From Octopus sinensis (Eukaryota): a stretch of 64,000 nt of DNA. The stretch covers positions 682,001-746,000 of the forward strand of contig NW_021833026.1 in assembly GCF_006345805.1 (NCBI RefSeq), in the 5' to 3' direction. The notes beneath the pieces are model-generated. The model searched no databases. It saw only the letters and a list, made by a program, of their open reading frames with translations, and had not been told where the DNA came from. Shown piece by piece: positions 4,597-64,000 of the stretch; the first letter of the stretch is position 1, and the number at the start of each line of letters is the position of its first letter. The translations under genes and the position numbers were made by a program.

Positions 4597-6340
4597 ATGA
4601 TGCGTCGTCAAATCTCGCATATTCTTAAACGTGCATTATCATCCGAATCAGACAACCTATCTTTCAATGAAATGGTCATGAAATATACACAGAATGCAGT
4701 TAAGATACTCGAACCATCCCTTGCCAACTACCTCCCTCGTAATATTTATAAAGTATATTTTAGCAAAAATGGATTCTGACGAGAAAAAAAGGATCATAAG
4801 TGGCATTTTAGAGAACATAATCCCCACCCACGCCACACTTAAAGTCAACTTTCCCGTAAAAATGGACGACGGCCGAATCAAAACTCTCACCGGATGGCGA
4901 GCCCAGCACTCAAACCACAGGCGACCAGTGAAGGGAGGTTCTCTTCAAATCTGTAAGTGTAGGCGTGAGATATTCTATTCACGTCAACGAGGACGAAGTC
5001 AACGCTCTGGCAACTCTCATGACCTTCAAATGTGCTGCCGTTGATGTTCCCTTTGGAGGGGCAAAGGGAGGAGTTAAAATTGATCCTTCAAAATGTTCGG
5101 AAAACGAATTAGAAAGAATAACCCGTCGATATACACTCGAGATTGTCAAAAAAAACTTTATGGGTCTATTTTAATCTGGTAATACCGTAGGACCGGCAAT
5201 CGATGTCTTAGCTCCAGACGTGGGGACAAATGCTCGGATTATGGCTTGGATGTCCGACACATACCAAAACACCGTCGGTAACCGTCAAATCACCATGTTA
5301 GGACACACTGACTTATATTCCCGTGCGTGTGTTACCGGAAAGCCTATTCCACAAGGGGGTATTCACGGAAGAGTCTCTGCCACAGGGAAAGGGTTGGTGA
5401 TCGCCACCAAGATGTTTATGAATAACTCTCAGTTCACCCAATCCGTCGGGATCAGTCCCGGACTCAGAGGGAAGACCTTTATAATCCAAGTGGAGGAGGG
5501 TGACTCATTTTTAGGGTTTCGGAAACGTGGGGTTACATGCGATGAGATATATGACGAGAGAAGGGGCAATGTGTATTGGAGTGATGGAACACGATGTCTC
5601 CCTTTACAACCCTTCAGGGATTGATCCACGGGAATTAGAAGATTACATGCTGGTATGAAGTAATATTGAATTTGCAGGAAAATAAATCGTTAAAAGGGTA
5701 TCCAAAGGCAAGAGAGTATTCGGGTGATTTATTCACTGAGCAGTGCGATATTCTTATTCCATGTGCGCTCGAAAGGCAAATCACAATGAAAAACGCTCCG
5801 TTCATAAAGGCTAAGGTTATTGTGGAAGGAGCTAATGGACCCACCACCGTGGCAGCCGACATGCATTTGAAATCGCGGAATGTTCTGACAATTCCTGATG
5901 TGTTGGCTAACAGTGGAGGAGTCATCGTTTCTTATTTTGAATTCCTTAAAAATCTTAATCACGTCAGTTTTGGTCGACTGTATTTCAAATATGAGAGAGA
6001 GTCCAATTATAATCTGTTGGGTATATTTTTTCTGTCATTTCAGCATCTGTGGCTGACTCTTTGAACATGTACAAGCAAAGTGGACAGGAGGATTACGTAA
6101 TCCAGCCGAACGAAGCATTCTTGAAAAAGATTGAGGGTGCCAGTGAAAAGGATATTGTCAATTCTGGATTGGAGTATACCATGGAGCGTTCTGCGAATGT
6201 ATTTTGTGTTTTTCAGCCTTAAGAAAATTATGGCTTCGAGTAACAAGTTCAACCTTGGAGTTGATTTGAGGACTTCCTGCTACGTGAATTCTCTAGAAAA
6301 AATATCGAGGGAATTTATAATGTCCGGAATAGTTCAATAG
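4597..6340 (+). CDS. GLUD1: Mitochondrial glutamate dehydrogenase
   Basis: Motifs [76 protein letters not shown]. Eight introns restore the frame: 4739-4763, 4938-4962, 5164-5190, 5278-5301, 5490-5514, 5653-5677, 6021-6043, 6199-6223 (23-27 nt). Confidence 0.97.
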
Positions 6341-7163
6341 TGGGGTAATCTTCTACTAATCTGTGTTTTAATCGCTTTTAATTCGATTATTCGGCATTTT
6401 TGTTGGTTAGTTGCTACATGATTTCTAGGCTAGTTATTGTTTCTCGTGTTAAATTGCCCATGTGGCTGCGGTAAATTGATTTTTAAAAAGATTTGATAAC
6501 TTTATATTTAATTTTTTTATATGCAGGTCGAAAAATTGGGTGTGACATAAATCAATATTTTCTTGTTATCCTTATTAATTTTCTATAAGAAGAGATTACG
6601 ATGGTTTCAGGAAATTGTTTTTAACTAACATTCAATTTCAATTATTTGCTTGGATTCTGTTTTTGATAAAAATTACTAAGGTTATTAAAAAAGTTTGTCA
6701 CAGGTCAAACTTTTTTTTGGTTAGCAGAAAAAATAATACTGTTTTTTTAAAAAAGTCATTCTTTATTTTCATTAGATCGACTAAAGTTTAAAGGGTCTTA
6801 ACAAAATTTTTAATTAATCTTGAAATGGTTTTTTTAGTGTCAAGCTGATGTTATTTTTCTTAGTAATTTTCACAGTTATTTAAAATATGAGCAAGTGTCA
6901 TCATTTTTGGCTGATCAGTTAAACTAATTTTATCGTCTGCAAGATCTTGACATACGTCACTGCTGAAAATGTTCACAGAAGGTACATATACATAATAAAA
7001 AGAGAACTTAGATCCAAAAATTACAAAATAAAAAATTAAGATGTGATCAATAACCCATATCTTTTATTTCTTATTAAAGTGAAATGTAGTAAAAATGAGA
7101 AGACCTGGAATCAACTGATGGAAATATATTTCTAGTCCAGGAATTGTTCTAATTTTTTTGGTG

Positions 7164-7333
7164 TTAATCCCATTTAGTTTGCTATTAATTTCATATTGTT
7201 AGATATTAATCCCACTCAGTTTTCTGTTAATTCCATTTAGTTTTTTATTAATTTCACTTAGTTTTCTATCGATTCCAGTTAGTTTTCTAATGATTTCACT
7301 TAGCTTGATTGGTTGGTGTTAATCCCACGTAGT
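7164..7333 (-). repeat. Degenerate 21-bp tandem array (about 8 units) that translates as heptads
   Basis: Plus-strand units such as ttaatcccatttagtttgcta, ttaatttcacttagttttcta and tcgattccagttagttttcta. The minus strand reads KLSEIIR-KLTGIDR-KLSEINK-KLNGINR-KLSGINI-*QYEINS-KLNGINT. Confidence 0.75.
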
Positions 7334-24477: not shown

Positions 24478-24620
24478 ATATATTTATGGAATAAGAGGAT
24501 ATATTTATGGAATAAGAGGATATATTTATGGAATAAGAGGATATATTTATGAAATAAGAGGATTTATTTATGAAATTAGAGGATATATTTATGAAATTAG
24601 AGGATATATTAATGAAATAC
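24478..24620 (+). repeat. 21-bp minisatellite, about 6.8 units
   Basis: Unit ATATATTTATGGAATAAGAGG with polarised variants (GGA->GAA from unit 4, ATA->ATT from unit 5). Confidence 0.95.
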
Positions 24621-29642: not shown

Positions 29643-30505
29643 CAGGCATTCTCAACCTTTTTTTGTTCATCGCCCCCTTAGATATTTTATCGCCCCCCTT
29701 TGAAATTTTATCGCCCCCTTGTCCATATACAATTTAAAAATTTTGGGCATTGTCCCTTAATTGGTTGTTTTTTGTATATAACTCAAAAATCAAAATATAA
29801 AATAATAAATCAAATGTAAAAATTGAATTTTTATTAAAAATTATTAGTGAGACTTTTGATATTGATGTTTACTCGCTAAATATTCTATGTCGGGTTTAAA
29901 TCCCATTAAAACAGCTTTACTATCTACAATGACGCTTTCATCAATTTGTAATGAAAACTTACTTCGCTTCAGTCTTTCAATAAGGATTTCCTCTACATTG
30001 TCACCCATTTCATCAATACTTTGACGAATCACCTGAACGTGTTAGTTAATGATTAAGACGTTGTGCGCACCCACAACTACATATAAATAAATGTTAAATA
30101 ACCATCATGTACTGGCTTTGTGAATAACGATTTGATCGTTTTCTTATTTTCAAAATTGTATTTTAAATTTTGAAAATATTCAATCGGCTTTGACATTTTA
30201 TCCGGGTGCTTGCGTTTTAGATGATCCTGTAATCGTGATGGCTTCATCGCCTCATTTGAGAAAGAACATTGACAAATAAGACAATAAGGCTGTTTTGTAT
30301 CTTCAGTACTTTGAATAAACCCATATTTTAAATATCGTTTTGATAATGACGACTTTTCTTATTGAGCGAAAAGACATCTTAGATACCAAACAAGAATGTA
30401 AAAACAGCGTGCTATTTTAAAATCGCCCCTTGTAAAAAATTATCGCCCCCCTGTACAAAATTTTCGCCCCTAGGGGGGCGATTCGCCCCCGGTTGAGAAC
30501 ACCTG
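29643..30505 (-). mobile_element. Complete non-autonomous hAT (Buster type), 863 bp
   Basis: TIRs CAGGCATTCTCAACC / GGTTGAGAACACCTG, perfect 8-bp TSD GCTTAAAG, and clustered TCGCCCC subterminal motifs at both ends. A deleted transposase joins FSLQIDES to KHQYQKSH*. Confidence 0.95.
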
Positions 30506-45829: not shown

Positions 45830-46317
45830 ATGGATGAATGGAATTTTTTGTTTTGCTGTTTCTGGCATCTGTTCATAGATCAGGTTTGAGGTAACAGATT
45901 AGTTTTTAAGTGAAATCGTTCAAAAGTGACAAAAGCGAATATTTTCCTGTACATGAATGGGTCACGTTCAAAGAAGCAATGAAAGAGTGTGAAAACAAAG
46001 GAATGAAAGTTATAAATATTGATGATTCAACGGAAAATACATTTTTGTCAAGTATTTTTAATTTTTTATTCAGAAATGCTTTCACCTAACATTGACTACT
46101 ACTTGGGCATATACTATTATAAGGATGTCTACGAATATAGAAAACTTGGAAAACAGAAACTGGTTTTTCTTTATTCTAATCACAGACCTACACAAATTGG
46201 GACCCGAATTTCGAGAACGACGGATATTCTTGCGTGGAGTTTAATTCTGGAAAAAATTTATGGAGAAAGGTGAATTGCAGTTTTCGCCGTTTTTACATAT
46301 GCGAAAAGACTATTTAG
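45830..46317 (+). CDS. Secreted single-domain C-type lectin
   Basis: Signal peptide MDEWNFFVLLFLASVH; VTFKEAMKECENKG..; YYLGI..; LTYTNWDPN..SCVEF..WRKVNCS..FYICEK*. Introns are 27, 22 and 23 nt. Confidence 0.85.
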
Positions 46318-47181: not shown

Positions 47182-50100
47182 ATGGGTGAAACTTTCAGCA
47201 AAGTTGCAGTTTGGCAAAATCAGGACGATTCTACAAAAAGATCCCTTGCATACTCCAAACTCAATTTATTCCTTTTTAAAAAAATATACAATTTTTTGAT
47301 CAAAATTTGCCTTGAAAAACCAAAATTAAAAAACGTGGTCTTCAAAACTCCCGTAATTTGGAACACGACCATCACAAACTTTCCCAGAACTGAAAAGTGG
47401 GCACTACGTAACATTATTATACAGAGAGGACACAAAGTCGTCCAAGGGACAAGGCACTTTTAATCGAGAATTAGGGACTTTTGAAGCATGGACTGTCGAA
47501 CAAATACTAAAAGTGCTCGAATTAAGCAAAGAAAATGTGATTATCGAACTTCAAAGTTTACTTCAAAGTAAAACTAATCATAAAATACAATTCAGGTAAT
47601 CCCGATCCCAAACAGATAATTTTACAACAAAAAATACAGCCAACCACCTTAGAACCCAACGACAAGATCGAGGATGGTGAAACTCCCGGAGTTCCAAATG
47701 ACAGTGGCAAAATACGAAACAAAAAATTTCGTCACATGCTTTACAATTTAATTTCTGAGTTCGATTTGCATCTGCGAGAACAAGAAATGCAAGATCTGTC
47801 TCTGTATTGCAATAAACGTGACAAATAGTGCCAATGTGTTCATCGCTCAGACAGTGGAAATGACAGTTTCTGAAATTGCCCAAAAGACTGGATTTGACCA
47901 AGAAAGGCATTTATTACAAGAAATTAGCTTTACTGGTAAAAGTTAATTAAAATAATATTAGATGAGTATGTTTATTCGAATGGGTGCCACATTCCTTCAT
48001 GGCGTCAAACAGAAGATGAGATTGCAGAACTATCAGTCACTCCTCTTGACGGGGACCATTTTTATGTTATGGTTTCGATCGACGGATTTTATATTAAAAA
48101 AGTACTTGAACTTAATAAAATTCGTTTAGGAGAATCAAAAGTATCAGAAACTGCCGCAACTCTTGGCTGAGAAAAGTGAAATTTTTAAAAGAAATTTTTA
48201 TGCAGAGGTACTGGTTGTAGAACTAAAATAAATAAGGCTCGAGATGAATCGACATCTGGTAACACGGGAGTCGAAAATAGTCAAAATAATGAATTGAAAC
48301 CCAAAATTGAAATTTCTGAAAAAATTATCCAAATACAAGATTTCAGATTCAAAGAAACCTTGAGTTATAAAACATTATTGACGGAAAATATGATCGAGTA
48401 AACAAACAATAATTAAATAAATTAGAGAAGAAGAACGAAATTCAAAAAGCAAACAAATAAAAAAGTTAATTAATAGCCACTCATTAAAAGAAGTCGCGAT
48501 AAACAAGAAATGGAAACTTCTTCCGAAAGTGCCAGCGATGACGCCGAAAAGAAGATCGAGGCACATATAGATTTGCCTTCTGAATACTGGCTGATACAAA
48601 AACTGATCAAATATATCAAAGTACGTATACAGCCTCAATTTTATAGTTCGGTAATAAAGTTGCCACTGTTCTGGGACTTGTGTTACTTGGGGACATGAAT
48701 TTGTCACTCGAAACAAGTCAGCAGGCCATTAAAGAAGCAGGAGGATTGGAAATCTTGATCAATTTGTTACAAACGTCGGAAACACGTTGCAAAGTGACTT
48801 CAATTTGAAAACTGAACTGTTTTAGATTGGAGCATTGCAGGTTATAAAAGAAATATCAACAAATTCTCGAATTCAGCGAACAATCGCGGATTTGGGTGGA
48901 TTGGAAATTATGGTCGAGTTGTTGATGGACAGAAATAGCAAGCTAAGACAACTATCAGCTCACACGATCGCCATAATCTCCAGGTTTGGAAGAGGAAGGA
49001 AGGCTGTTCGGAGATATGGGGGTATCCAAAAATTGGTTTTTTATTAAAATATGTTCTCAGGTCACATTATTACGCATTGGATGCAACGAGACTAAAAATT
49101 CTGACGACAAAGACGTTGAAAGTGCCAAATCGAGCGCTTTGGCTTTGTGTAGTTTAGCGGAAAGTGCCAGCAATAGACGTCTCATGAACCAATGTGGAGT
49201 GACCCCACTTCTTGGAGAACTTTTAAAATCAAAAAACGAGGATTTGTTGATTCCGATTGTGGGGACATTAGAAAAATGTGCAGTTGAGGTTATATTGTGA
49301 TTTTTCATATTTTTTTGAACAGCAATCATACCGACTACAAATCAGGAATGAAGGAATGTTAGAAGGACTAGTTAAATGTCTATCAAGCGAAAATGTCATT
49401 CTGAACACATATTGTGCCAAGGCTTTGTTCAATGTGAAAATAAAAAAAGTAATAAACACAGTGCGGGGAGGATAGCGAAACTCGAAATCTCATAAGACAA
49501 TACGGCGGATTGAAGCCCTTAGTAGGATTTCTCACTCAAATCGACAATAAAGAATTGATTGCTGCTGCCACAGGAGCAATCTGGAAATGTGCTATAAACG
49601 AAGAAAACGTGCAAGTTTTTGGAAAATATAAGACTACATCTCAACTTGTTGGATTACTTGTCGATCAGCCTGATGAAGTAATTAATGAAAAATTTGATCA
49701 TTAGGTACTTGTCAACGTCACTGGGGCTCTCAGTGAGTTGGCGAAATGCTCAGATTGCAGAGCAAAGATCCGGGCTTCAAATGGAATAGTTTTACTCATA
49801 AATCTACTTGTTGGAACTAATAAAGACCTGTTGGCGAATGCCACTAAAGCAATAGGAGAATGTGCGCACGACAACGAAAACTTGCAGTAAAAATATAACC
49901 AGGTTAATACACAGAATAATCGACAAAAATGACGGAGTAAGACTTATGTGGTCTCTACTGAAAAATCCAAATCCAAGAGTACAGGCCAACGCAGCCTGGG
50001 CCATCTCTCCCTGTGTTAATAACCTCAAAGTTCATAATTAATTATAATTAATTCTCAGGAGGCTGGTGAACTAGTACGGTCCTTTGTTGGAGGAATAGAC

Positions 50101-50665
50101 TTGATCGTCAGCCTCCTCAAGTCCCCTCATATTGAGGTACTTGCAAACGTCTGTGCTGCAATAGCCAATATTGCCAAAGACCACGAAAACCTAGCCGTGT
50201 TGACAGATCATGGAGTGGTGGCCACCCTTTCGGCCTTAACAAACACAGTTTGTTCTCAATATTAACCTTAGACGTGTATTAAATTAAGAGAACACTTAGC
50301 AATGGCCATTGCTATGTGTTGTGGATACTATCAAAACAGGAGGGAATTCGGGCTCAGAAACACTGTCCCACCACTTGTCAGTTACGTCAAAACTGATGAC
50401 TTTAAAGTACAAAGAGCAGCAGTGATTGCACTTCAAAAACTCTCATTAGACCAAGAGAACTGCATTATTATGCACAGAGAAGGACTTGTTAAGGCATGTT
50501 GTATTTTAATCATATTAGTTACTTATTGGACTTATGAAATATGGGGATAATGCCATGCAGGAGGCAAACGCCGCCTGTATTGCCAACATAAGGCAATTGG
50601 CACTAAGGAATGAAAGAGAAAGACTACAAAAACTATACAGACATAAAAGCTCAGTAAAATGCTAG
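47182..50665 (+). CDS. ARMC4: Outer dynein arm docking complex subunit ARMC4/ODAD2
   Basis: [17 protein letters not shown]; [15 protein letters not shown]; [14 protein letters not shown]; AATGAIWKC; VQANAAWAI..; [20 protein letters not shown]; [10 protein letters not shown]. Confidence 0.93.
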
Positions 50666-51158
50666 TCAGGATTAATCATTGTTAACAAAACTAACAAATA
50701 CTAATTTTTGACTGGTCCTTTTGAACAAGGGATATATTTTGGCAAAGAAGTCGGCTTTCTTACTACAATACAAAAAGTTTCGAGACCTGACCGGCCAGCG
50801 GAGTAGCTGTCCTAAAGAAAGATTAATTAACGATAGTTATAATTAATTGAGTTACATATTACGAACTGTCACCGGTTGAGAGTGATTGCAGGCTGAGAAC
50901 GATTTAAAGCCTTATAGTAATAAATCTAAATTCATCTCCCGGTGTATATGAATACATAAAAATCACATAATCATTTTCAAATAACTGTCTTATTTATTTA
51001 AGCTAATTCTTCTTGGAGAAATTTAAAGTTGTTCAATGCATATTGGTTTATTATTTACATAGTCAAATAAATAATATTTTTTAATTCTTTATAGAAAATT
51101 AACTCCAAAATGATAAATTATTGAATAATTGAAAATAAAATATCACTAATTAATTCTA

Positions 51159-54086: not shown

Positions 54087-54466
54087 CTCTAGAACATATT
54101 GAGTAAAAAAATATTTGGTGTTAATTAGACTATCATTTTAATAATCTTTCAATAAAAATCGTAATCGTAAATAGCCCTGCCGCAAGATATAAACAACATG
54201 TTGACATATTTTCCATCTCGCCCAGGCTGGTCACACTTTTTTTATAGAAAGATCAAGACAAAAAGAGAACATGTTACCAAGGAACTAACTAATCCAAACG
54301 AAGTCATGTGTCTCTTCGGCTCCGTCTTGTTCCCCCCTTTTTGTTGTGTAGTCGATGAAGACATCCGGAATCTTTCAATAAGCCGATCAAATTAAACATT
54401 TTGAATTTTAAAATCGTCAGTACAGTGGGTCAAATTAGTTTTGGGAGACGTTTATTTTTAATAATA

Positions 54467-55213
54467 CAGTAAAACCTCTCGAATCAACAAATTGACTACA
54501 AGATATTGGATCGTCAATTTGAAATTTCTTAATTATTTCTTCATAATTATTTTCGTAGTTCTTAGATTCACTGTTGATTGTGATTGTTTCACATTTTATC
54601 CATTGTGCATAACGGAAACAATTTTTGATGGTCGTAGGAGTAACTTTATTCCAAGCGAAGAATGTTATTGTCGCAGCAGTTTTAAGGGTGATTGCATTAA
54701 TTGCATTTTGACAATTTTCCCCTGCCGCAACCTTTTCGATTATATCATTTGTTTTCAAATTGGTAAATTCGGCTTTAAAACATTTTATAATTCCTTGATC
54801 CATTGGTTGCAAGAGCGAGGAAGTTCTAGGAGACAAAAAAAGAATTTCAATTGAGTTTAACGTGACAAAGAATCGCCTTGTAAAAAACACCAGTTTCATC
54901 TGCATTATAAACATTTTCCAATCCATATTGTTCAATTTTAAATTGATTGTTTCATTAAAATCAGCAATAGATTTTTCATCATGATTTACTGATCCACTGT
55001 CTCCGTGAAATTTTCTTAACTTGATACCATTTCGTAATTTAAACTTTTTTAGCCACCCATGACTTGCTTTAAATTCTGGAAAATTTTTTCCAAATTTAAG
55101 AGCTTTTGCAATTAACATCGAATCTGATAGAATTGCTGCACTAGATTCCATTAAGTTAATCCATGTTATCATCGCTACATCAATTTCATTAAATTTGAGT
55201 TTTGGAATTTTCT
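54467..55213 (-). mobile_element. Older Tigger/pogo transposase remnant, interrupted at TA 55214-55215
   Basis: CENP-B HTH FKASHGWLKKFKLRNGI; LQPMDQGIIK; TIR TA-CAGTAAAACCTCTCGAATCAACA at 54467. Confidence 0.85.
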
Positions 55214-55215
55214 TT

Positions 55216-56915
55216 ACAGTCCGACCCCAAAATGGGGCAGACCCCAGGGGTGGGGCACCCCCGCAATTTGGGGCACTTTATTCCAAAAGTACATTTTGGC
55301 AGAAAAAAAATAAAAATCGATAAAAAATTATGGAATTTTTGGGGCACCATAAAATCATTTATAAGGAATTAAAATAAAATAAAATTATAATAAATTAATT
55401 ATTTTTGTTTTATTTTCAATTTATATTTTTATTGTTGTGGTTATGGATTACGAAACTAAATTGAAGATTGCTAAAGAAATTTTGAAGAAAAATTTATCTG
55501 AGAGGCAACTAATGAAAAAGTACAACACAAGTAAAGGAACAATATCAAGAATAAAACGAAATATTGTACCTTTCTTGCAACACGGCAATACTATTTCTGA
55601 GGAATATGACACATTTAAAGCCGATAAAGATAAATTTGATGATCAAGTCTTTGAAATATTTCAAAGACTACGCGTAGATAAAATTCCGATTTCAGGCCCT
55701 ATTTTGAAAAAAATTGCCTTAGTTACAGCTTCAAAAATTGGATTTACTTCTTTTAAAGCTTCCAATGGGTGGCTTGATAGATTTAAATTGCGGCATGAAC
55801 TTCAATTCAAGTCAATATGCGGTGAAAAAGCTTCATGTGATTTATCTTATGTGAAAAATTATTTTGAAAAATATGACCAGAAAGTATTAAATATGGACCT
55901 GAGAATATATTTAATTGTGATGAAACTGCGCTTTTTATAAAAAGAACTCCTCAAAAATCATTTGTTGAACAAGGCGAACCGTGTTTTGGTTTTTAAACAA
56001 GGGAAAGAAAGACTCACTGTTCTTCTATGCTGCAGTTTAATCGGGGAAAAACTTAATCCATTGATTATTGGAAAATATAAAAAACCTCGGTGTCTAAAAA
56101 ATTTTGATGTTCAAGATTTTGGGTTATTGTATTCATCTTCTCAAAATGCATGGATGACTGGAAAGACTTTTATGAGTTGGCTTACACTTATAAATGAATC
56201 GTTTTGCAAAAACAACAGAAAAATATTATTAATACTTGACAATGCGGGATGCCATAAAACTGCCGAATGTTCGAACATCGAATTTTTATTTTTGCCGAAA
56301 AATACAACGCCCTATTTACAACCTTTGGATATGGGAATAATCAAGATTTTTAAAGATTATTATTCCTCTTTCTTAATGGAATTTTTATGTTTTCAAGATT
56401 TCGAAAACGATTTTACACATTCTATTGGTAAATTAAATTTGCGTCTTATGATGCTAATTTCAAAAGGATGGGAGAAAATAGATGCTAAAAGTATTGTTAA
56501 TTGTTGGAAGAAAATCGACAGGAACCGTGATTCTTATGCAACAAAAAACTGTCTAACAGATGAACATTTAGATCAAGTTGTTAACGAAACAATTGATGGA
56601 GAATGCGAAGACATGAACAATAATGTTTATGATACATATTCAGAAACCGAAAATAGTGAAAATGTCGTAGCAAAAACAAAAGATCTGCTTAACAATTTAG
56701 AAGAAAAAATTTCTAATGTTGCACCAAGTATGCTCCGAGATTTTTTTGATTTTCGGCTGAAATTGACGAACAATATCAGACAAAACTCTACAAATAAAAA
56801 GAAAATAACTGAATATTTTAGTAAAAATGTTTTTTTGATGTTATTAATGGTTTAATTTTTAAAAAAATAACAACCCCCTGTTTTTTGGGCACCCCCGCAT
56901 TTTTGGGGCCAAAAA
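55216..56915 (+). mobile_element. Tigger/pogo transposon with a near-intact transposase and no right TIR
   Basis: TA-CAGTCCGACCCCAAAATGGGG left end; FKASNGWLDRFKLRH; NCDET; KERLTVLLC; ILDNAGCH; LQPLDMGII. Two compensating homopolymer indels at about 55888 and 55995. Confidence 0.92.
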
Positions 56916-56929
56916 ACCTCGACTTACCT

Positions 56930-57612
56930 GTCGACATATGATGGCTCGAAAATATTGGTGTCAGTCGATGTTTAATATGGCCTGGGAATTTGTGATTTTT
57001 TCGGACGAATGTCGAATTCAGCTCTTCAATTCAAGAGAATATATCAAAGACCACCTTCAATGAGATAATAGAAAAAATACACTTCAGAAACCGTCAAATT
57101 TGCCCCTAGCATAATGGTATGGGGAGCGATACGATTTGATGGCAAAAGAAGTTTAATATTATGCAATGAAAAACTAAATTCTGCACGTTATCAATCTATT
57201 ATATCTGAAGGACTAAATGATTTATATACATCAAATTACAAATTTCAACAAGATGGGGCAACTTGCCACACATCCAGATCTACAAGAGATTTTTTAAATA
57301 ACAGTGGCATTACTATAGTAGAGAATTGGCCAAGTCAATCACCGGATCTCAATATAATTGAGCATGTTTGGTGTTTGCTAAAGTCAAAAATACGATTAAA
57401 GGTCCCTGAAACAGTACAGGACTTATGGAAAAGTACGAAAGAGGAATGGGAGGCAATTGATGACAGTTTTATAAGGGAATTATATAATTCGATGCCCAGA
57501 AGAATATATTCAGTCTATAATTGTAAAGGAAGTTTGACGAAATACTAATCTTTGTTTTTTTGATTTAAAGTTAGTAAATAAATAAAGTGGCCTCTTTTCA
57601 TTGCATGACCTA
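56930..57612 (+). mobile_element. Tc1 transposase, 3' portion
   Basis: VIFSDE; MVWGAI; FQQDGATCHTS; WPSQSPDLNIIEHVW; ends KGSLTKY*. Confidence 0.9.
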
Positions 57613-57652
57613 GAAATGGTCAAATTTAATAAATTAAATAAAATTGGCATTA

Positions 57653-58362
57653 TAGTCCGACCCCAAAATGGGGTCAGATACCCAGGGGGAGGGCAACCCT
57701 CGATTTTGGGAACATTCACCCCCGCAATTTGGGACTTTATTCCAAAAGTACATTTTGGCAGAAAAAAAAATAACCATCGATAAAAAATTATGGAATTTTT
57801 GGGGCAAACCATAAAATCATTATAAGGATTAAAAATAAAATAAATTATAATAACATTAATTATTTTTTGTTTTATTTTCAATTTATATTTTTTATTTTGT
57901 GGTTATGGATTACGAAACTAAATTGAAGATTGCTAAAGAAATTTTGAAGAAAAATTTATTGAGAGGCAACTAATGAAAAAGTAACAACACAAGTAAAGGA
58001 ACAATATCAAGAATAAAACGAATATGTACCTTTCTGCAACAACGGCAATACTATTCTGAGGAATATGACACATTTTAAAGCCGATAAAGATAAATTTGAT
58101 GATCAAGTCTTTGAAATATTTCAAAGACTACGCGTAGATAAAATTCGATTTTCAGGCAGGCCTATTTTGGAAAAAATTGCCTTAGTTACAGCTTTCAAAA
58201 TTGGATTTACTTCTTTTAAAGCTTCCAATGGGTGGCTTGATAGATTTAAATTGCGGCATGAACTTCAATTCAAGTCAATATGCGTGAAAAGTTCATGTGA
58301 TTTATCTATGTGACAAATTAATTTTTTGAAAAATATGACTCCAAAAGTATTAAAATATGGAC
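57653..58362 (+). mobile_element. Indel-rich second copy of the Tigger 5' end (matches 55216-55896)
   Basis: Colinear near-identity with 55216-55896, with many single-base indels. It stops abruptly at ATGGAC 58357-58362. Confidence 0.93.
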
Positions 58363-58896
58363 GATTGCAGTTCTAAGAGACACAACCTCATCATCTCTTC
58401 TGGCATTCCGTGGAAATCCTCATTTACTGTGTCCTCACCGTCAACCAATTCAACCAAAGTACACACCGAACCCTTCAATCCATTTCCACAGGCCTGGAAT
58501 CATCAAGTCCAGTTACCCATTTATACACCAAATCGCCCCATTCTCTGGCCTTTATCCAGAAAATGTAACAGGAAGTGCAGGACGAGTCCTTCCATTGTGC
58601 CCTCCCTGTCTTGACAAGATGTTGGAATATAGTGGATATGCTTTCGGTGGTCAACTGGCCTATTTGTGCTAATATGTGACTACGCTGAATTTTCTGGTTA
58701 GAAAAAAGTGCCCGGGCTTGGCTTATGGTGAGGAAGTAGAGGGAGTGGCATCTGCAATATGCCAATATGATCTGCTCCCAGGACTCCAACTGTCTGTTCC
58801 TCACGTCGATATTCCTTTGTATTCTGAGTTAAGTTGATTTTATGTTAAATACGTAAACATTGGAGGAAAGTCATAAATTTCAGGGAATGAAAACAT
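58357..58896 (-). CDS. VPS25: ESCRT-II subunit VPS25, 3'-truncated in this sequence
   Basis: MFSFPEIYDFPPMFT|IQRNIDVRNRQLESW; IQR|QLTTESI; FWIKAREWGDLVYKW|..CTLVELVDGEDT..FHGM. No stop codon is reached before the Tigger junction. Confidence 0.9.
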
Positions 58897-58959: not shown

Positions 58960-59400
58960 TGGTCATCCTCCCAGAAAGCCCACCATCAAAATCATGGACT
59001 CTCCGATAATATTCCAGATGGCGATTTTCCGCTAACAAACTTTTAGCCATACCACTTTCAAGTCAATTTGGCAACTGTTCCGACATACGAACAAGCAGAT
59101 CTTAGTCCATGAAAGATGTCGTTAATGGCTGGAACTATAGATCCTCGGCATTTTATGCGGATAGTTCTCCCTTTTTTATTTATTTATTTAAAGACCAAAC
59201 ACGGGTAAGCCAGTTAATTATTATAATCCCCTTGGTCCCCGATTCAAGCGAGGGAGATCCTACTGAAAGGTTCGATCCTGCCCACATGAACGACCTGAGA
59301 CGACGATGTCCCAGGGTCAGAGATCTAGAAGTCCTTTTTCAATTAGGCCTTGAAGTCTGAGACCAAAACCTTGTCGGGAATTAAAGAAAACAGAGGTATA
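58960..59400. other. Unresolved coding-like GC-richer segment
   Basis: Minus frame 59171-59079 reads GRTIRIKCRGSIVPAINDIFHGLRSACSYVG (GMP-reductase-like C-terminal motif). A plus-strand spliced reading is also possible. Confidence 0.3.
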
Positions 59401-59434
59401 TTTTCATTTTATGTGTATTTTTCAGATGTCATAA

Positions 59435-61324
59435 TCTTAATAATAAAATGGTATGGTGTGTGTCTGTCTGTCTGTCTGTGTGTCTGTCTGTCTGTCTGTG
59501 CACACCCACATTCAAATAAAAATGAGAGAACAAGAATCCGAACTAATTAAGAAGATCATTGTCTCCAGAAAACCCTTTCCATTGAAGATCCAACAGGGAA
59601 TGTGCACAAGTCTGAGTCGTCGCCGTTATGTTCGGAAAGGGGAGTAGAACCGACTCCGTTACAACAGACATATGCATACATCTGAAGGAAATCCTTAGAT
59701 TAGGTGATTCTGGTGGCCAACGCATCACACTAATAGAAACCAACGAGCGCAACCGCGTGTAATTAAGAAGATCCAAACACACTAATAGAAACCAACGAGC
59801 GCAACCGCGTGATTGAAACTATTGTTGTTACAAACCAGATCAAATTGTCAAAACCTTCCCTTTTGTAGTTATTCGATAATGAGGCACAATAAAAGGTTGA
59901 TATCCTCTAAGAACCTTCCTGTCAAAAAATTTAATAAGAAAGAATATCCTCGATGATGAGGTCCCCCAAAACCTTCAAGTCAATTTTCTGCGTTTTTGTT
60001 AAAATGAACAACAAGAAAGTCCTCGACTCACATGATGTGGTCCCCCAAAACCTTCAAGCCAAAAAATTAAAAAAATTATTTTCTGCGTTTTTGTTAAAAT
60101 GAACAACAAGAAAGTCCTCGACTCACATGATGTGGTCCCCCAAAACCTTCAAGCCAAAAAATAAAAAAAATTATTATTTTCTGCGTTTTTGTTAAAATGA
60201 ACAACAAGAAAGTCCTCGACTCACATGATGTGGTCCCCCAAAACCTTCAAGCCAAAAAATAAAAAAAAAATTATTTTCTGCGTTTTTGTTAAAATGAACA
60301 ACAAGAAAGTCCTCGACTCACATGATGTGGTCCCCCAAAACCTTCAAGCCAAAAAATTAAAAAAAATTATTTTCTGCGTTTTTGTTAAAATGAACAACAA
60401 GAAAGTCCTCGACTCACATGATGTGGTCCCCCAAAACCTTCAAGCCAAAAAATTAAAAAAAATTATTTTCTGCGTTTTTGTTAAAATGAACAAGAAGAAA
60501 GTCCTCGACTCACATGATGTGGTCCCCCAAAACCTTCAAGCCAAAAATTAAAAAAAATTATTTTCTGCGTTTTTGTTAAAATGAACAACAAGAAAGTCCT
60601 CGACTCACATGATGTGGTCCCCCAAAACCTTCAAGCCAAAAAATTAAAAAAAATTTTCTGCGTTTTGTTAAAATGAACAACAAGAAAGTCCTCGACTCAC
60701 ATGATGTGTCCCCCAAAACCTTCAAGCCAAAAATTAAAAAAAATTATTTTCTGCGTTTTTGTTAAAATGAACAACAAGAAAGTCCTCGACTCACATGATG
60801 TGGTCCCCCAAAACCTTCAAGCCAAAAATTAAAAAAATTATTTTCTGCGTTTTTGTTAAAATAAACAACAAGAAAGTCCTCGACTCACATGATGTGGTCC
60901 CCCAAAACTTCAAGCCAAAAAATAAAAAAAATTATTTTCTGCGTTTTTGTTAAATGAACACACAAGAAAGTCCTCGACTCACATGATGTGGTCCCCCAAA
61001 ACCTTCAAGCCAAAAAATTAAAAAAAATTATTTTCTGCGTTTTTGTTAAAATGAACAACAAGAAAGTCCTCGACTCACATGATGTGGTCCCCAAAACCTT
61101 CAAGCCAAAAAATTAAAAAAAATTATTTTCTGCTTTTATGTTAAATGAACAACAAGAAAGTCCTCGACTCACATGATGTGGTCCCCCAAAACCTTCAAGC
61201 CCAAAAATTAAAAAAAATATTTTCTGCGTTTTTGTTAAAATGAACGACAAGAAAGTCCTCGACTCACATGATGAGGTCCTCCACAACCTTCAAGCCTCGT
61301 GAGGCCATTAAATAGCTTAGCTAT
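59435..61324 (+). mobile_element. Non-autonomous Helitron-like element carrying a 96-bp satellite array
   Basis: A|TCTTAATAATAAAATGGTATGG 5' end, (GTCT)n microsatellite, internal tandem array, and a 3' hairpin GCCTC-GT-GAGGC at 61294-61305 followed by CTTAG/CTAT. The terminus is not a perfect CTAG. Confidence 0.6.
59985..61297. repeat. 96-bp satellite array 1 (14 units plus degenerate leading units)
   Basis: Unit TTATTTTCTGCGTTTTTGTTAAAATGAACAACAAGAAAGTCCTCGACTCACATGATGTGGTCCCCCAAAACCTTCAAGCCAAAAAATTAAAAAAAA, counted by eye. Most variation is homopolymer length. Confidence 0.97.
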
Positions 61325-61786
61325 CTTTTTTCGATGACTAAATTCTTTTTTGTTAAATTTTCGTTAAAAAAATAAAAAAGCTCTAATTGTTATCGACCAT
61401 GAATCTGTGCAATTATCATTTTTGAAAACCACTAAAAAGGAAAAAGCAAAAATTAGAGATTTACATAATTGATTCTTTTTACTGCCGAAACTGACAAATT
61501 CGATTATGCTACTGTTTAGATTCTTAAAAGATAGAGGCAAATAAAATTTAAATTAGTCATGTAAATTTCAATTTGCCTATATTTAAATCTCCTTGATTTA
61601 ACAGGCTTTATTTTTTTCCTTATAATACTACAAAGATGAAGCTGATTATCATTTTCTTTACCGAAACAGACAAGTTCGATTATGCTAAAGTTTCAATTCC
61701 TTTAAACATAGAGGCAATTAAGTATAATGCTTTTGTTGGATAATAACACTTTACATAAATTTCACTAAATAAATTTACGTAGAAAA

Positions 61787-61897
61787 TCTTAATAATAAAA
61801 TGGTATGGTGTGTGTTCTGTCTGTCTGTCTTTGTGTCTGTCTGTCTGTCTGTCTGTCTGTGCACACCCACATTCAAATTGTTACCAACCAGAATCAA
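61787..61897 (+). mobile_element. Second Helitron-like head
   Basis: Repeats the 59435-59517 head (TCTTAATAATAAAATGGTATGG, (GTCT)n, GCACACCCACATTCAAAT) 2352 bp downstream and leads directly into the satellite. Confidence 0.75.
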
Positions 61898-64000
61898 TAA
61901 AAAAATTATTTTCTGCGTTTTTGTTAAAATGAACAACAAGAAAGTCCTCGACTCACATGATGTGGTCCCCCAAAACCTTCAAGGTAAAAAATTAAAAAAA
62001 TTATTTTCTGCGTTTTTGTTAAAATGAACAACAAAAAGTCCTCGACTCACATGATGTGGTCCCCCAAAACTTTCAAGCCAAAAATTAAAAAAATTATTTT
62101 CTGCGTTTTTGTTAAAATAAACAACAAGAAAGTCCTCGACTCACATGATGTGGTCCCCCAAAACCTTCAAGCCAAAAAATTAAAAAAATTATTTTCTGCG
62201 TTTTTGTTAAAATGAACAACAAGAAAGTCCTCGACTCACATGATGTGGTCCCCCAAAACCTTCAAGCCAAAAAATAAAAAAAATTATTTTCTGCGTTTTT
62301 GTTAAAATGAACCACAAGAAAGTCCTCGACTCACATGATGTGGTCCCTCAAAACCTTCAAGCCAAAAATTAAAAAAAATTATTTTCTGCGTTTTTGTTAA
62401 AATGAACAACAAGAAAGTCCTCGACTCACATGATGTGGTCCCCAAAACCTTCAAGCCAAAAAATTAAAAAAATTATTTTCTGCGTTTTTGTTAAATGAAC
62501 AACAAGAAAGTCCTCGACTCACATGATGTGGTCCCCCTCAAACCTTCAAGCCAAAAATTAAAAAAAAAAATTATTTTCTGCGTTTTTGTTAAAATGAACA
62601 ACAAGAAAGTCCTCGACTCACATGATGTGGTCCCCCAAAACCTTCAAGCCAAAAAATTAAAAAAATTATTTTCTGCGTTTTTGTTAAAATGAACAACAAG
62701 AAAGTCCTCGACTCACATGATGTGGTCCCCCAAAACTTCAAGCCAAAAAATTAAAAAAAATTATTTTCTGCGTTTTTGTTAAAATAAACAACAAGAAAGT
62801 CCTCGACTCACATGATGTGGTCCCCCAAAACCTTCAAGCCAAAAAATTAAAAAAAATTATTTTCTGCGTTTTTGTTAAAATGAACAACAAGAAAGTCCTC
62901 GACTCACATGATGTGGTCCCCCAAAACCTTCAAGCCAAAAAATTAAAAAAAATTATTTTCTGCGTTTTTGTTAAAATGAACAACAAGAAAGTCCTCGACT
63001 CACATGATGTGGTCCCCCAAAACCTTCAAGCCAAAAAATTAAAAAAATTATTTTCTGCGTTTTTGTTAAAATAAACAACAAGAAAGTCCTCGACTCACAT
63101 GATGTGGTCCCCCAAAACCTTCAAGCCAAAAAATTAAAAAAATTATTTTCTGCGTTTTTGTTAAAATGAACAACAAGAAAGTCCTCGACTCACATGATGT
63201 GGTCCCCTCAAACCTTCAAGCCAAAAAATAAAAAAAATTATTTTCTGCGTTTTTGTTAAAATGAACAACAAGAAAGTCCTCGACTCACATGATGTGGTCC
63301 CCCAAAACCTTCAAGCCAAAAATTAAAAAAAATTATTTTCTGCGTTTTTGTTAAAATGAACAACAAGAAAGTCCTCGACTCACATGATGTGGTCCCCCAA
63401 AACCTTCAAGCCAAAAAATTAAAAAAAATTATTTTCTGCGTTTTTGTTAAAATGAACAACAAGAAAGTCCTCGACTCACATGATGTGGTCCCCCAAAACC
63501 TTCAAGCCAAAAAATTAAAAAAATTATTTTTTCTGCGTTTTTGTTAAAATGAACAACAAGAAAGTCCTCGACTCACATGATGTGGTCCCCCAAAACCTTC
63601 AAGCCAAAAAATTAAAAAAATTATTTTCTGCGTTTTGTTAAAATGAACAACAAGAAAGTCCTCGACTCACATGATGTGGTCCCCCAAAACCTTCAAGCCA
63701 AAAAATTTAAAAAAATTATTTTCTGCGTTTTTGTTAAATGAACAACAAGAAAGTCCTCGACTCACATGATGTGGTCCCCCCAAAACTTTCAAGCCAAAAA
63801 TTAAAAAAATTATTTTCTGCGTTTTTGTTAAAATAACAACAAGAAAGTCCTCGACTCACATGATGTGGTCCCCCAAAACCTTCAAGCAAAAAATTAAAAA
63901 AATTATTTTCTGCGTTTTTGTTAAAATGAACAACAAGAAAGTCCTCGACTCACATGATGTGGTCCCCAAAACCTTCAAGCCAAAAAATTAAAAAAATTAT
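61898..64000. repeat. 96-bp satellite array 2 (at least 22 units, runs off the window)
   Basis: Same unit as array 1. Confidence 0.98.

What the first reader, a model, noticed from the sequence alone, without database searches (positions are those of the whole stretch)
59435..64000. Helitron-like cassette that carries and amplifies a 96-bp satellite
Seen: an identical head (A|TC start, AATAATAAAA, (GTCT)n) occurs twice, 2352 bp apart, each followed by the same 96-bp array (14 and at least 22 units). Degenerate proto-units precede array 1, whose last unit runs into a GC hairpin and CTTAG/CTAT. Established: non-autonomous Helitrons/Helentrons (DINE-1, HINE) have this head-microsatellite-tandem repeat-hairpin layout and seed satellites. 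Inference: satellite birth caught in progress. Dicyemids are reported to form extrachromosomal circles and eliminate DNA in somatic cells, so a rolling-circle vehicle is a candidate source or target.
Basis: partly seen in the sequence, partly recalled or inferred. Interest (0 to 1): 0.7.

Follow-up and report, generated by a model that had tools for sequence, protein, structure and literature searches.

The report
Tandem duplication of satellite-bearing unit
A 2.4-kb stretch made of a short (GTCT)n run, a 95-base satellite array and an AT-rich tail has been copied head-to-tail in place; it resembles known Helitron-family satellite carriers and lies next to a Helitron-type helicase fragment, but nothing shows that it ever moved.

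Summary
An 85-nt head with (GTCT)n occurs twice, 2352 bp apart, each time followed by the same 95/96-bp array: 14 units, and 22 units up to the window end.

I recovered 1172 bases beyond the window from the public contig (VCDQ01001555.1, Octopus sinensis assembly). Array 2 stops after 26 units, with the same diverged last unit, the same hairpin and palindrome, and the same ~490-bp AT-rich tail as copy 1. So the repeat is one composite unit, E1 (59433-61784) and E2 (61785-64860), duplicated head-to-tail with no spacer and with short homology at the breakpoints. It is not two insertions of a short cassette. The "head" is simply what lies upstream of a 308-nt deletion in copy 2. The hairpin and CTTAG lie about 460 bp inside the unit, not at its end.

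No CTRR end, terminal hairpin or subterminal inverted repeats were found.

Two things favour a Helitron-family origin: the module order matches DINE-1/HINE, and a PIF1/Helitron-type helicase fragment begins 220 bp downstream on the same strand.

The genome-wide copy number could not be measured. The contig has 22-25-nt introns, so it is probably dicyemid DNA inside an octopus assembly. Ordinary to moderately interesting.

The parts
59433..59517 (+). Start of unit E1: 30 nt (AATCTTAATAATAAAATGGTATGGTGTGTG), the (GTCT)n microsatellite at 59457-59500, and 18 nt (GCACACCCACATTCAAAT).
   Evidence: Identical to 61785-61878 except for microsatellite length.
59518..59985 (+). Spacer present in full only in E1 (40% GC). 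It holds a 34-nt perfect direct repeat (59726-59759 and 59778-59811, period 52), a segment at 59826-59843 that is retained in E2, and one degenerate satellite unit at 59918-59983.
59986..61296 (+). Array 1: 14 units of the 95/96-bp satellite. The last unit (61222-61296) is diverged and cut at 75 nt. Each unit carries the palindrome CACAT-G-ATGTG.
61297..61784 (+). Tail of E1, 488 bp at 26% GC. The GC hairpin at 61294-61305 overlaps the array end. The tail also holds the palindrome at 61312-61324, a T-run at 61326-61331, and two diverged copies of a ~180-bp segment (61413-61588 and 61608-61770). It ends ...ACGTAGAA.
   Evidence: The same tail follows array 2 outside the window (569 matches, 6 mismatches).
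61785..61878 (+). Start of unit E2 (second 'head'), joined directly to the end of E1.
61879..61910 (+). Short junction in E2. 61879-61897 is homologous to 59826-59843 of E1, so E2 is E1 minus 308 nt and about 135 nt.
   Evidence: 0 of 2000 shuffles reach the score.
61911..64000 (+). Array 2: 22 units inside the window, 26 in all. Ends at 64360 on the public contig, followed by tail 2 (64361-64860), the 3' flank, and a PIF1-type helicase fragment from about 65079.

Best explanation
**Shown.**
- One composite segment of about 2.35 kb exists as a direct head-to-tail dimer with no DNA between the copies: E1 at 59433-61784 and E2 at 61785-64860. Its parts are a (GTCT)n block, a spacer, a 95/96-bp array and a 490-bp AT-rich tail.
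- The trinucleotide AAT is shared by both ends of the unit.
- The first ~15 nt after E2 (AATTTAATATAAATT) resemble the first 17 nt of the unit (AATCTTAATAATAAAAT).

**Inferred.**
- The dimer arose by unequal exchange or replication slippage between these two short direct repeats flanking a single-copy ancestor.
- The array already existed at that time, because both copies share the same diverged last unit and the same unit variants.
- Afterwards the arrays drifted to 14 and 26 units by unequal exchange. E2 lost 308 and about 135 nt of spacer. The tails accumulated about 1% substitutions.
- The locus shows tandem duplication at five scales: 4 nt, 52 nt, 95 nt, about 180 nt and 2.35 kb. This suggests a slippage-prone AT-rich intergenic stretch.

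**Origin of the unit (inferred, about 0.4-0.5).** It may be a decayed Helitron-superfamily element of the Helentron/HINE type. This rests on the DINE-1-like module order, including a GTCY microsatellite, and on the Helitron-type helicase fragment 220 bp downstream.

No function is implied. It is non-coding repeat DNA.
For: - Tail 2 matches tail 1 (569 matches, 6 mismatches) through ...ACGTAGAAAAT and then diverges.
- The last array unit is identical in both copies, 75 of 75.
- The array consensus is the same in both arrays, and variants such as G21A and the shifted TT occur in both.
- The E2 junction is homologous to 59826-59843 (0 of 2000 shuffles).
- Breakpoint homology is in the top 0.8% of random window 20-mers.
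- Neither head, unit nor tail occurs elsewhere in 64 kb.
- Nested duplications.
- HINE-like layout versus the literature.
- Helicase fragment: Pfam PIF1 E 7.3e-5; the second of only two weak PDB matches (E 1.2) is the Helraiser Helitron transposase, over its motif II stretch.
Against: - A head-to-tail junction is also what a rolling-circle concatemer or a re-integrated circle would give (Helraiser circles, PMC4778049).
- The dimer as a whole can be read as A|TC...A|T, so a Helitron-type event is not excluded.
- The breakpoint homology is short, lies in AT-rich DNA, and has p of about 0.008, which is suggestive only.
- Only two copies at one locus could be examined.
Confidence: 0.6

Rival explanations
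1. The unit is a Helitron-superfamily non-autonomous element, or the 5' part of a decayed autonomous one. It was copied by rolling-circle replication and integrated, or was amplified in place, as a head-to-tail concatemer. The adjacent helicase belongs to the same element.
For: - Precise head-to-tail junction with no filler.
- The flanks can be read as A|TC ... A|T.
- GTCY microsatellite, central repeats and palindrome occur in the DINE-1/HINE order.
- A PIF1/Helitron-type helicase motif II lies 220 bp downstream on the same strand.
- Helraiser makes head-to-tail circles, tolerates loss of the 3' end, and creates de novo 3' ends.
Against: - No CTRR at either 3' end (...CGTAGAAAA).
- No terminal hairpin (z -0.13).
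- No 11-14-nt subTIR against any candidate 3' region.
- No Rep domain or helicase motifs I/Ia between E2 and motif II, or upstream of E1.
- The 3' flank resembles the unit start, which fits homology-mediated duplication better.
- No other copy in 64 kb.
Confidence: 0.27
2. One reading: two separate insertions of a short cassette (head, microsatellite, array, hairpin, CTTAG), separated by 485 bp of host DNA.
For: Inside the window alone, the head recurs and the array ends next to a hairpin and a palindrome.
Against: - The 485-bp 'host' spacer is itself repeated after array 2 at about 99% identity, so it belongs to the duplicated unit.
- The hairpin and palindrome are therefore internal.
- CTTAG and CTAT are not CTRR.
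Confidence: 0.03
3. Assembly artefact: a false tandem join of two alleles, or of reads from one satellite locus, in a long-read assembly of mixed octopus and parasite DNA.
For: - Homopolymer-length noise shows that the array consensus is poorly polished.
- The source is a PacBio assembly of an octopus, in which this contig looks foreign.
Against: - The copies differ structurally: a 443-nt loss, 14 versus 26 units, and about 1% substitutions.
- The upstream flank is not duplicated.
- The E1-E2 junction lies in unique sequence, not inside an array.
- A 5.4-kb dimer is within the length of single reads.
Confidence: 0.05

Closest known systems
DINE-1 / HINE (non-autonomous Helentrons), including Cg_HINE of Crassostrea gigas and the pearl/DTC84 elements of bivalves
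   Same: - A short 5' block holding a GTCY-type tetranucleotide microsatellite, here (GTCT)n. DINE-1 has (CCGT)n(CTGT)n on the same strand.
- A spacer of variable length.
- Species-specific central tandem repeats that can grow into satellite arrays.
- A short palindrome and then a T-run after the last repeat.
- No coding capacity.
   Different: [quoted passage not shown]
- The palindrome lies about 460 bp from the end of the repeated unit.
- The 5' flanks do not show a TT target.
- The arrays (14 and 26 units) are longer than the usual 1-6 units.
- Only one locus is known here.
Canonical Helitrons (Helibat/Helraiser type)
   Same: - The unit can be phased to start with TC after an A and to be followed by a T.
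- There is a head-to-tail junction like that of Helitron circles and tandem arrays.
- A helicase fragment next door aligns with Helraiser motif II.
   Different: - No CTRR at the 3' end.
- No hairpin 10-12 nt upstream of the 3' end.
- No Rep domain seen.
- Mobility is not shown.
Ordinary segmental tandem duplication containing a young satellite or minisatellite array
   Same: - Two adjacent copies in the same order and orientation.
- Short homology at the breakpoints.
- Array length changed after the duplication.
- Array edge units are diverged while inner units are homogenised.
   Different: Nothing observed is incompatible with this. It does not by itself explain the HINE-like layout or the neighbouring helicase.

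Membership tests
Canonical Helitron | 5'-TC terminus joined to a host A | tested here: inconclusive
   The shared sequence starts AATCTT. The phase A|TC is possible at E1 (CATAA|TC) and at the E1-E2 junction (GAAAA|TC). With a 3-nt ambiguity in AT-rich DNA, this is weak evidence.
Canonical Helitron | 3'-CTRR terminus followed by a host T | tested here: not met
Canonical Helitron | Palindrome or hairpin about 10-12 nt upstream of the 3' end | tested here: not met
   The last 90 nt fold at -5.1 kcal/mol, z -0.13. The GC hairpin lies about 480 bp upstream of the unit end.
Canonical Helitron | Dispersed copies with empty sites and no target-site duplication | not testable with these tools
   The rest of the genome could not be reached. 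There is no other copy in the 64-kb window.
Canonical Helitron | RepHel autonomous partner | tested here: inconclusive
   A PIF1-type motif II fragment lies at about 65079-65172 (Pfam E 7.3e-5; Helraiser E 1.2). It is cut off by the end of the available DNA. No Rep or PIF1 signal was found in the window.
HINE / DINE-1 (Helentron non-autonomous) | 11-15-bp subterminal inverted repeats near both ends | tested here: not met
   The best complementary 11-14-mers between the 5' region (59170-59462) and either candidate 3' region were matched or beaten by 67-300 of 300-500 shuffles. The candidate 3' regions were the sequence after the arrays and the unit ends.
HINE / DINE-1 (Helentron non-autonomous) | [quoted passage not shown] | tested here: not met
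   None in the 30 nt before the microsatellite. The only inverted repeat is an imperfect one bracketing the microsatellite, and it folds no better than shuffles (z -0.25).
HINE / DINE-1 (Helentron non-autonomous) | GTCY-rich microsatellite in the 5' block | tested here: met
   (GTCT)n of 43-52 nt in both copies. These are the only such runs in 64 kb.
HINE / DINE-1 (Helentron non-autonomous) | Central tandem repeats between the 5' and 3' blocks | tested here: met
   95/96-bp units, 14 and 26 copies.
HINE / DINE-1 (Helentron non-autonomous) | 3' palindrome or stem-loop within about 8-35 bp of the 3' end | tested here: inconclusive
   A palindrome (61312-61324) followed by a T-run comes right after the array. 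It is about 460 bp from the end of the duplicated unit, it is not beyond chance, and its outer pair is lost in E2.
HINE / DINE-1 (Helentron non-autonomous) | Insertion between T and T in T-rich DNA | tested here: inconclusive
   The 5' flank ends ...GTCAT. The 3' flank starts AATTTAAT or TTTAAT depending on phase. There is only one locus.
Segmental tandem duplication | Two adjacent copies sharing all modules in the same order, with a direct junction and homology at the breakpoints | tested here: met

The most novel reading that the evidence does not exclude
The composite unit is an active rolling-circle replicon of a dicyemid. A Helitron-type RepHel encoded next door nicks at the unit start and produces head-to-tail concatemers and circles carrying the 95-bp satellite. 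These molecules contribute to the extrachromosomal circular DNA and chromatin elimination reported in dicyemid somatic cells.
Probability: 0.05. Interest if true: 0.8.

Novelty: new member of a known kind. Interest (0 to 1): 0.3.

Why it matters
If the unit proves to be a Helentron/HINE relative, it would extend the known transposon-to-satellite route to dicyemids, whose repeats make up 49% of the genome and are almost undescribed. That route is already documented in flies, mites and bivalves. It would also give a concrete sequence to test against the circular DNAs reported in these animals.

As it stands, the finding is a cautionary case. A recurring 'head plus array' inside one window can be a single local duplication rather than evidence of a mobile cassette.

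The side observation may be of more practical use: an 892-kb contig of an octopus reference assembly looks like parasite DNA.

Tried and rejected
**Reaching the rest of the genome.**
- The open frame of the satellite used as a protein query gave no hits.
- The mariner and ATP5A open reading frames found no same-genome proteins.
- Exact look-ups of 13 window ORFs in all failed, except one pogo ORF. That ORF sits in a one-member cluster.

**Scans of public collections.**
- The satellite core had 0 hits in JGI metagenomes and in GTDB genomes.
- A head 19-mer had 9 hits, all chance matches with no microsatellite next to them.
- Sequence strings had 0 hits in the literature.

**Rivals ruled out or left unsupported.**
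- SINE or tRNA origin: Rfam and tRNA scans found nothing.
- Sequence comparison with Cg_HINE flanks was not possible, because the supplementary table is illegible and holds no sequences.
- My by-eye reading of PIF1 motifs I/Ia and of further GMP-reductase exons upstream of E1 was not supported by Pfam. I rejected it.
- Only a 34-aa GMP-reductase-like stretch remains (PDB E 0.006).
Full report
**1. What is in the window**

The region was read directly.
- A block of 85 nt at 59433-59517 recurs at 61785-61878 (94 nt). The block is AATCTTAATAATAAAATGGTATGGTGTGTG, then (GTCT)n, then GCACACCCACATTCAAAT. The only difference between the copies is the microsatellite length.
- Similarity starts exactly at 59433/61785. 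The upstream flanks are unrelated.
- Each half of the block occurs only twice in 64 kb, against 0 expected. (GTCY)3 runs occur nowhere else, apart from one 1-mismatch hit.
- Tandem Repeats Finder reports a 95-nt period over 59983-64000.
- Cutting at a fixed anchor gives 14 units in array 1 (59986-61296) and 22 units in array 2 up to the window end.
- Units are 93-98 nt. Aligned, they share one 95-nt consensus with no fixed difference between the arrays. Most differences are single-base homopolymer length changes, which looks like long-read consensus noise. A few real substitutions recur in both arrays.
- A profile of the unit finds one significant degenerate unit before array 1 (59918-59983, E 9.6e-8), the diverged last unit (61222-61296), and nothing elsewhere in the window.

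**2. Getting beyond the window**

The genome was at first unreachable.
- The satellite's single open frame has no protein homologues.
- The mariner and ATP-synthase queries found nothing from the same genome.
- Collection scans were empty or gave chance matches.

One intronless pogo ORF (54435-55172, minus strand) turned out to be on record. It lies on contig VCDQ01001555.1 (892,098 bp) of GCA_006345805.1. A paper names that assembly as the Octopus sinensis assembly.

The locus returned is identical to the window over 19,566 bases and continues 1172 bases past its end. A window coordinate x corresponds to record coordinate x + 682,000.

**3. What the extra sequence shows**

- Array 2 ends after 26 units, at 64360.
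- Its last unit is the same diverged 75-nt unit as in array 1, identical at 75 of 75 positions.
- It is followed by the same GCCTCGTGAGGC hairpin, the same palindrome and T-run, and the same ~490-bp AT-rich sequence that separates array 1 from the second head. That tail shows 569 matches, 6 mismatches and about 10 small indels.
- Similarity runs through ...ACGTAGAAAAT and then stops.

The repeated object is thus a whole composite unit, present as E1 (59433-61784, 2352 bp) and E2 (61785-64860, 3076 bp), joined head-to-tail with nothing between them.
- The 'spacer' that looked like host DNA belongs to the unit.
- The hairpin and CTTAG lie about 460-480 bp inside the unit.
- The short junction after head 2 is homologous to 59826-59843 of E1 (0 of 2000 shuffles). 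E2 is therefore E1 minus 308 and about 135 nt. The 'head' is simply what lies upstream of that deletion, not a conserved terminal module.

**4. Breakpoints**

- AAT is shared by the start and the end of the unit.
- The first 15 nt after E2 (AATTTAATATAAATT) resemble the first 17 nt of the unit (AATCTTAATAATAAAAT). Only 0.8% of random 20-mers from the window align as well.
- This is the pattern expected if a single-copy ancestor flanked by two short similar sequences was duplicated by unequal exchange or slippage.
- The locus also carries tandem duplications at 4 nt, 52 nt (59726-59811), 95 nt and about 180 nt (61413-61588 and 61608-61770), besides the 2.35-kb dimer.
- The array predates the dimer, because the edge unit and the variants are shared. 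It later changed in length to 14 and 26 units.

**5. Tests of Helitron and HINE membership**

The defining features were taken from the literature:
- Canonical Helitrons (PMC4778049) have 5'-TC, CTRR-3', a palindrome about 11 nt before the 3' end, and an A|T target.
- DINE-1/HINE (PMC2374699, PMC4067079, PMC7492417) have 11-15-bp subTIRs, an inverted repeat beside the 5' subTIR, and a GTCY-rich microsatellite in the 5' block. They also have a variable spacer, central repeats, a 3' stem-loop and a TT target.

Results here:
- The microsatellite and the central repeats are present, in the DINE-1 orientation.
- The unit can be phased as A|TC...A|T, but its 3' end is ...CGTAGAAAA, not CTRR.
- The last 90 nt do not fold better than shuffles (z -0.13), and neither does the hairpin/palindrome region (z -0.84).
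- No complementary 11-14-mer links the 5' region to either candidate 3' region beyond what shuffles give.
- No tRNA or Rfam family is present.

Membership in either family is therefore not established. The resemblance is one of layout.

**6. The helicase next door**

- After a 22-nt GT..AG intron (65057-65078), the + strand 220 bp downstream of E2 reads LIVWDECTMAHKGAF. After a 1-nt frame change it reads AVDRTYRDIKN.
- Pfam places this on PIF1 positions 101-134 (E 7.3e-5, below the gathering score because the piece is short).
- In the PDB search there were only two weak matches. One (E 1.2) is the Helitron transposase Helraiser, over its own motif II stretch (LLIIDECTMASSHAINAIDRLLREI). No cellular PIF1 chain in the PDB matched at E up to 10.
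- The fragment is cut by the end of the available DNA.
- There is no room for a Rep domain or helicase motifs I/Ia between E2 and this motif. Pfam and motif scans find none upstream of E1 or anywhere in 46-59.4 kb.

The fragment raises the odds of a Helitron-family history for the locus, but it does not tie the unit to it.

**7. Context**

- The window carries host genes with 25-nt introns (glutamate dehydrogenase, 5490-5514 and 5654-5678). Among animals, introns this short are reported only for dicyemids and myxobolid myxozoans. I recall that dicyemids live in octopus kidneys, and that Dicyema japonicum is found in this octopus. The contig is thus probably parasite DNA within the octopus assembly.
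- Immediately upstream lie a VPS25/ESCRT-II gene (58353-58828, minus strand, E 1e-22), a 34-aa GMP-reductase-like relic (about 59060-59165, minus strand, PDB E 0.006), and pogo and mariner copies.
- The reported circular DNAs and chromatin elimination in dicyemids are real literature (PMC6543705). Nothing here links them to this unit.

**8. Verdict**

- The Helitron-like reading is partly supported as a resemblance and a lead, but not as membership or as evidence of mobility.
- Best explanation (about 0.6): one recent local head-to-tail duplication of a composite, satellite-bearing unit. A Helitron/Helentron-type ancestry of that unit is plausible at about 0.4-0.5.
- Main rival (about 0.27): a rolling-circle concatemer of a Helitron-family element.
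- Two independent cassette insertions are contradicted. An assembly artefact is unlikely.
- Decisive data exist publicly but were out of reach here: the rest of the contig and the genome-wide copies.

Noticed in passing
Whole window (VCDQ01001555.1:682001-746000 of GCA_006345805.1): The window lies on an 892-kb contig of the Octopus sinensis reference assembly. Its genes have 22-25-nt GT..AG introns, for example 5490-5514 and 5654-5678 in a glutamate dehydrogenase gene. Among animals, introns this short are reported only for dicyemids and myxobolids. The contig is probably dicyemid (kidney parasite) DNA carried in the octopus assembly.
   Followed up: partly
L010:1-94 read on the minus strand (window-scale coordinates 65079-65172, outside the window): A PIF1/Helitron-type helicase motif II fragment (LIVWDECTMAHKGAF / AVDRTYRDI) with one frameshift. 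It is preceded by a 22-nt intron, lies on the + strand 220 bp after the tandem dimer, and is cut by the end of the DNA held.
   Followed up: partly
window 59060-59165, minus strand: A 34-aa stretch (GRTIRIKCRGSIVPAINDIFHGLRSACSYVGTVA) matches the C-terminus of GMP reductase (PDB E 0.006). No other exon of such a gene is detectable where it should lie (above 59165). It is either a relic exon or a chance match.
   Followed up: partly
window 58353-58828, minus strand: An ESCRT-II/VPS25 gene (Pfam PF05871, E 1e-22). Its start faces the repeat unit about 600 bp away.
   Followed up: yes
window 54435-58362: A cluster of DNA-transposon pieces. Pogo/Tc5-type HTH and DDE_1 ORFs lie on both strands (54435-55172 minus, 55437-56855 plus). 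A mariner-type DDE_3 ORF lies at 57114-57548. A second pogo HTH piece at 58000-58362 is 92% identical to 55538-55898.
   Followed up: partly
window 61413-61588 and 61608-61770; 59726-59811: Older and smaller tandem duplications inside the unit. Two diverged copies (about 80% identical) of a ~180-bp segment lie in the tail. A perfect 34-nt repeat with a 52-nt period lies in the spacer.
   Followed up: partly
window 59986-64000: Each satellite unit carries the palindrome CACAT-G-ATGTG. A 96-nt version of the unit (the 95-nt consensus with one extra A in its last A-run, as in many of the units) is open in one frame: FCVFVKMNNKKVLDSHDVVPQNLQAKKLKKII. That frame has no homologue in the protein collection. 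Unit length varies (93-98 nt) mostly at homopolymers, suggesting unpolished long-read consensus.
   Followed up: partly
window 24478-24619; 7157-7307; 29669-29720 and 30422-30470: Other short tandem arrays with a 21-nt period. One has 6.8 copies at 95% matches, one has nested 21/42/63-nt periods, and two nearby share the ATCGCCCCC... unit. None is related to the 95-bp satellite.
   Followed up: no
L011 (Logan SRR29645014_53966): A 2.3-kb contig from an unrelated sequencing run encodes an ATP synthase alpha piece. It has the same 171-aa ORF length as the window's ORF and is 87% identical, with adjacent overlapping ORFs that suggest very short introns. It may come from a related parasite.
   Followed up: no
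window 46180-46314; 48800-50700, plus strand: A C-type lectin-like exon and a multi-exon armadillo-repeat gene (Pfam Arm, E 8.5e-28). These are host genes, showing that the repeat sits in otherwise ordinary gene-bearing DNA.
   Followed up: partly
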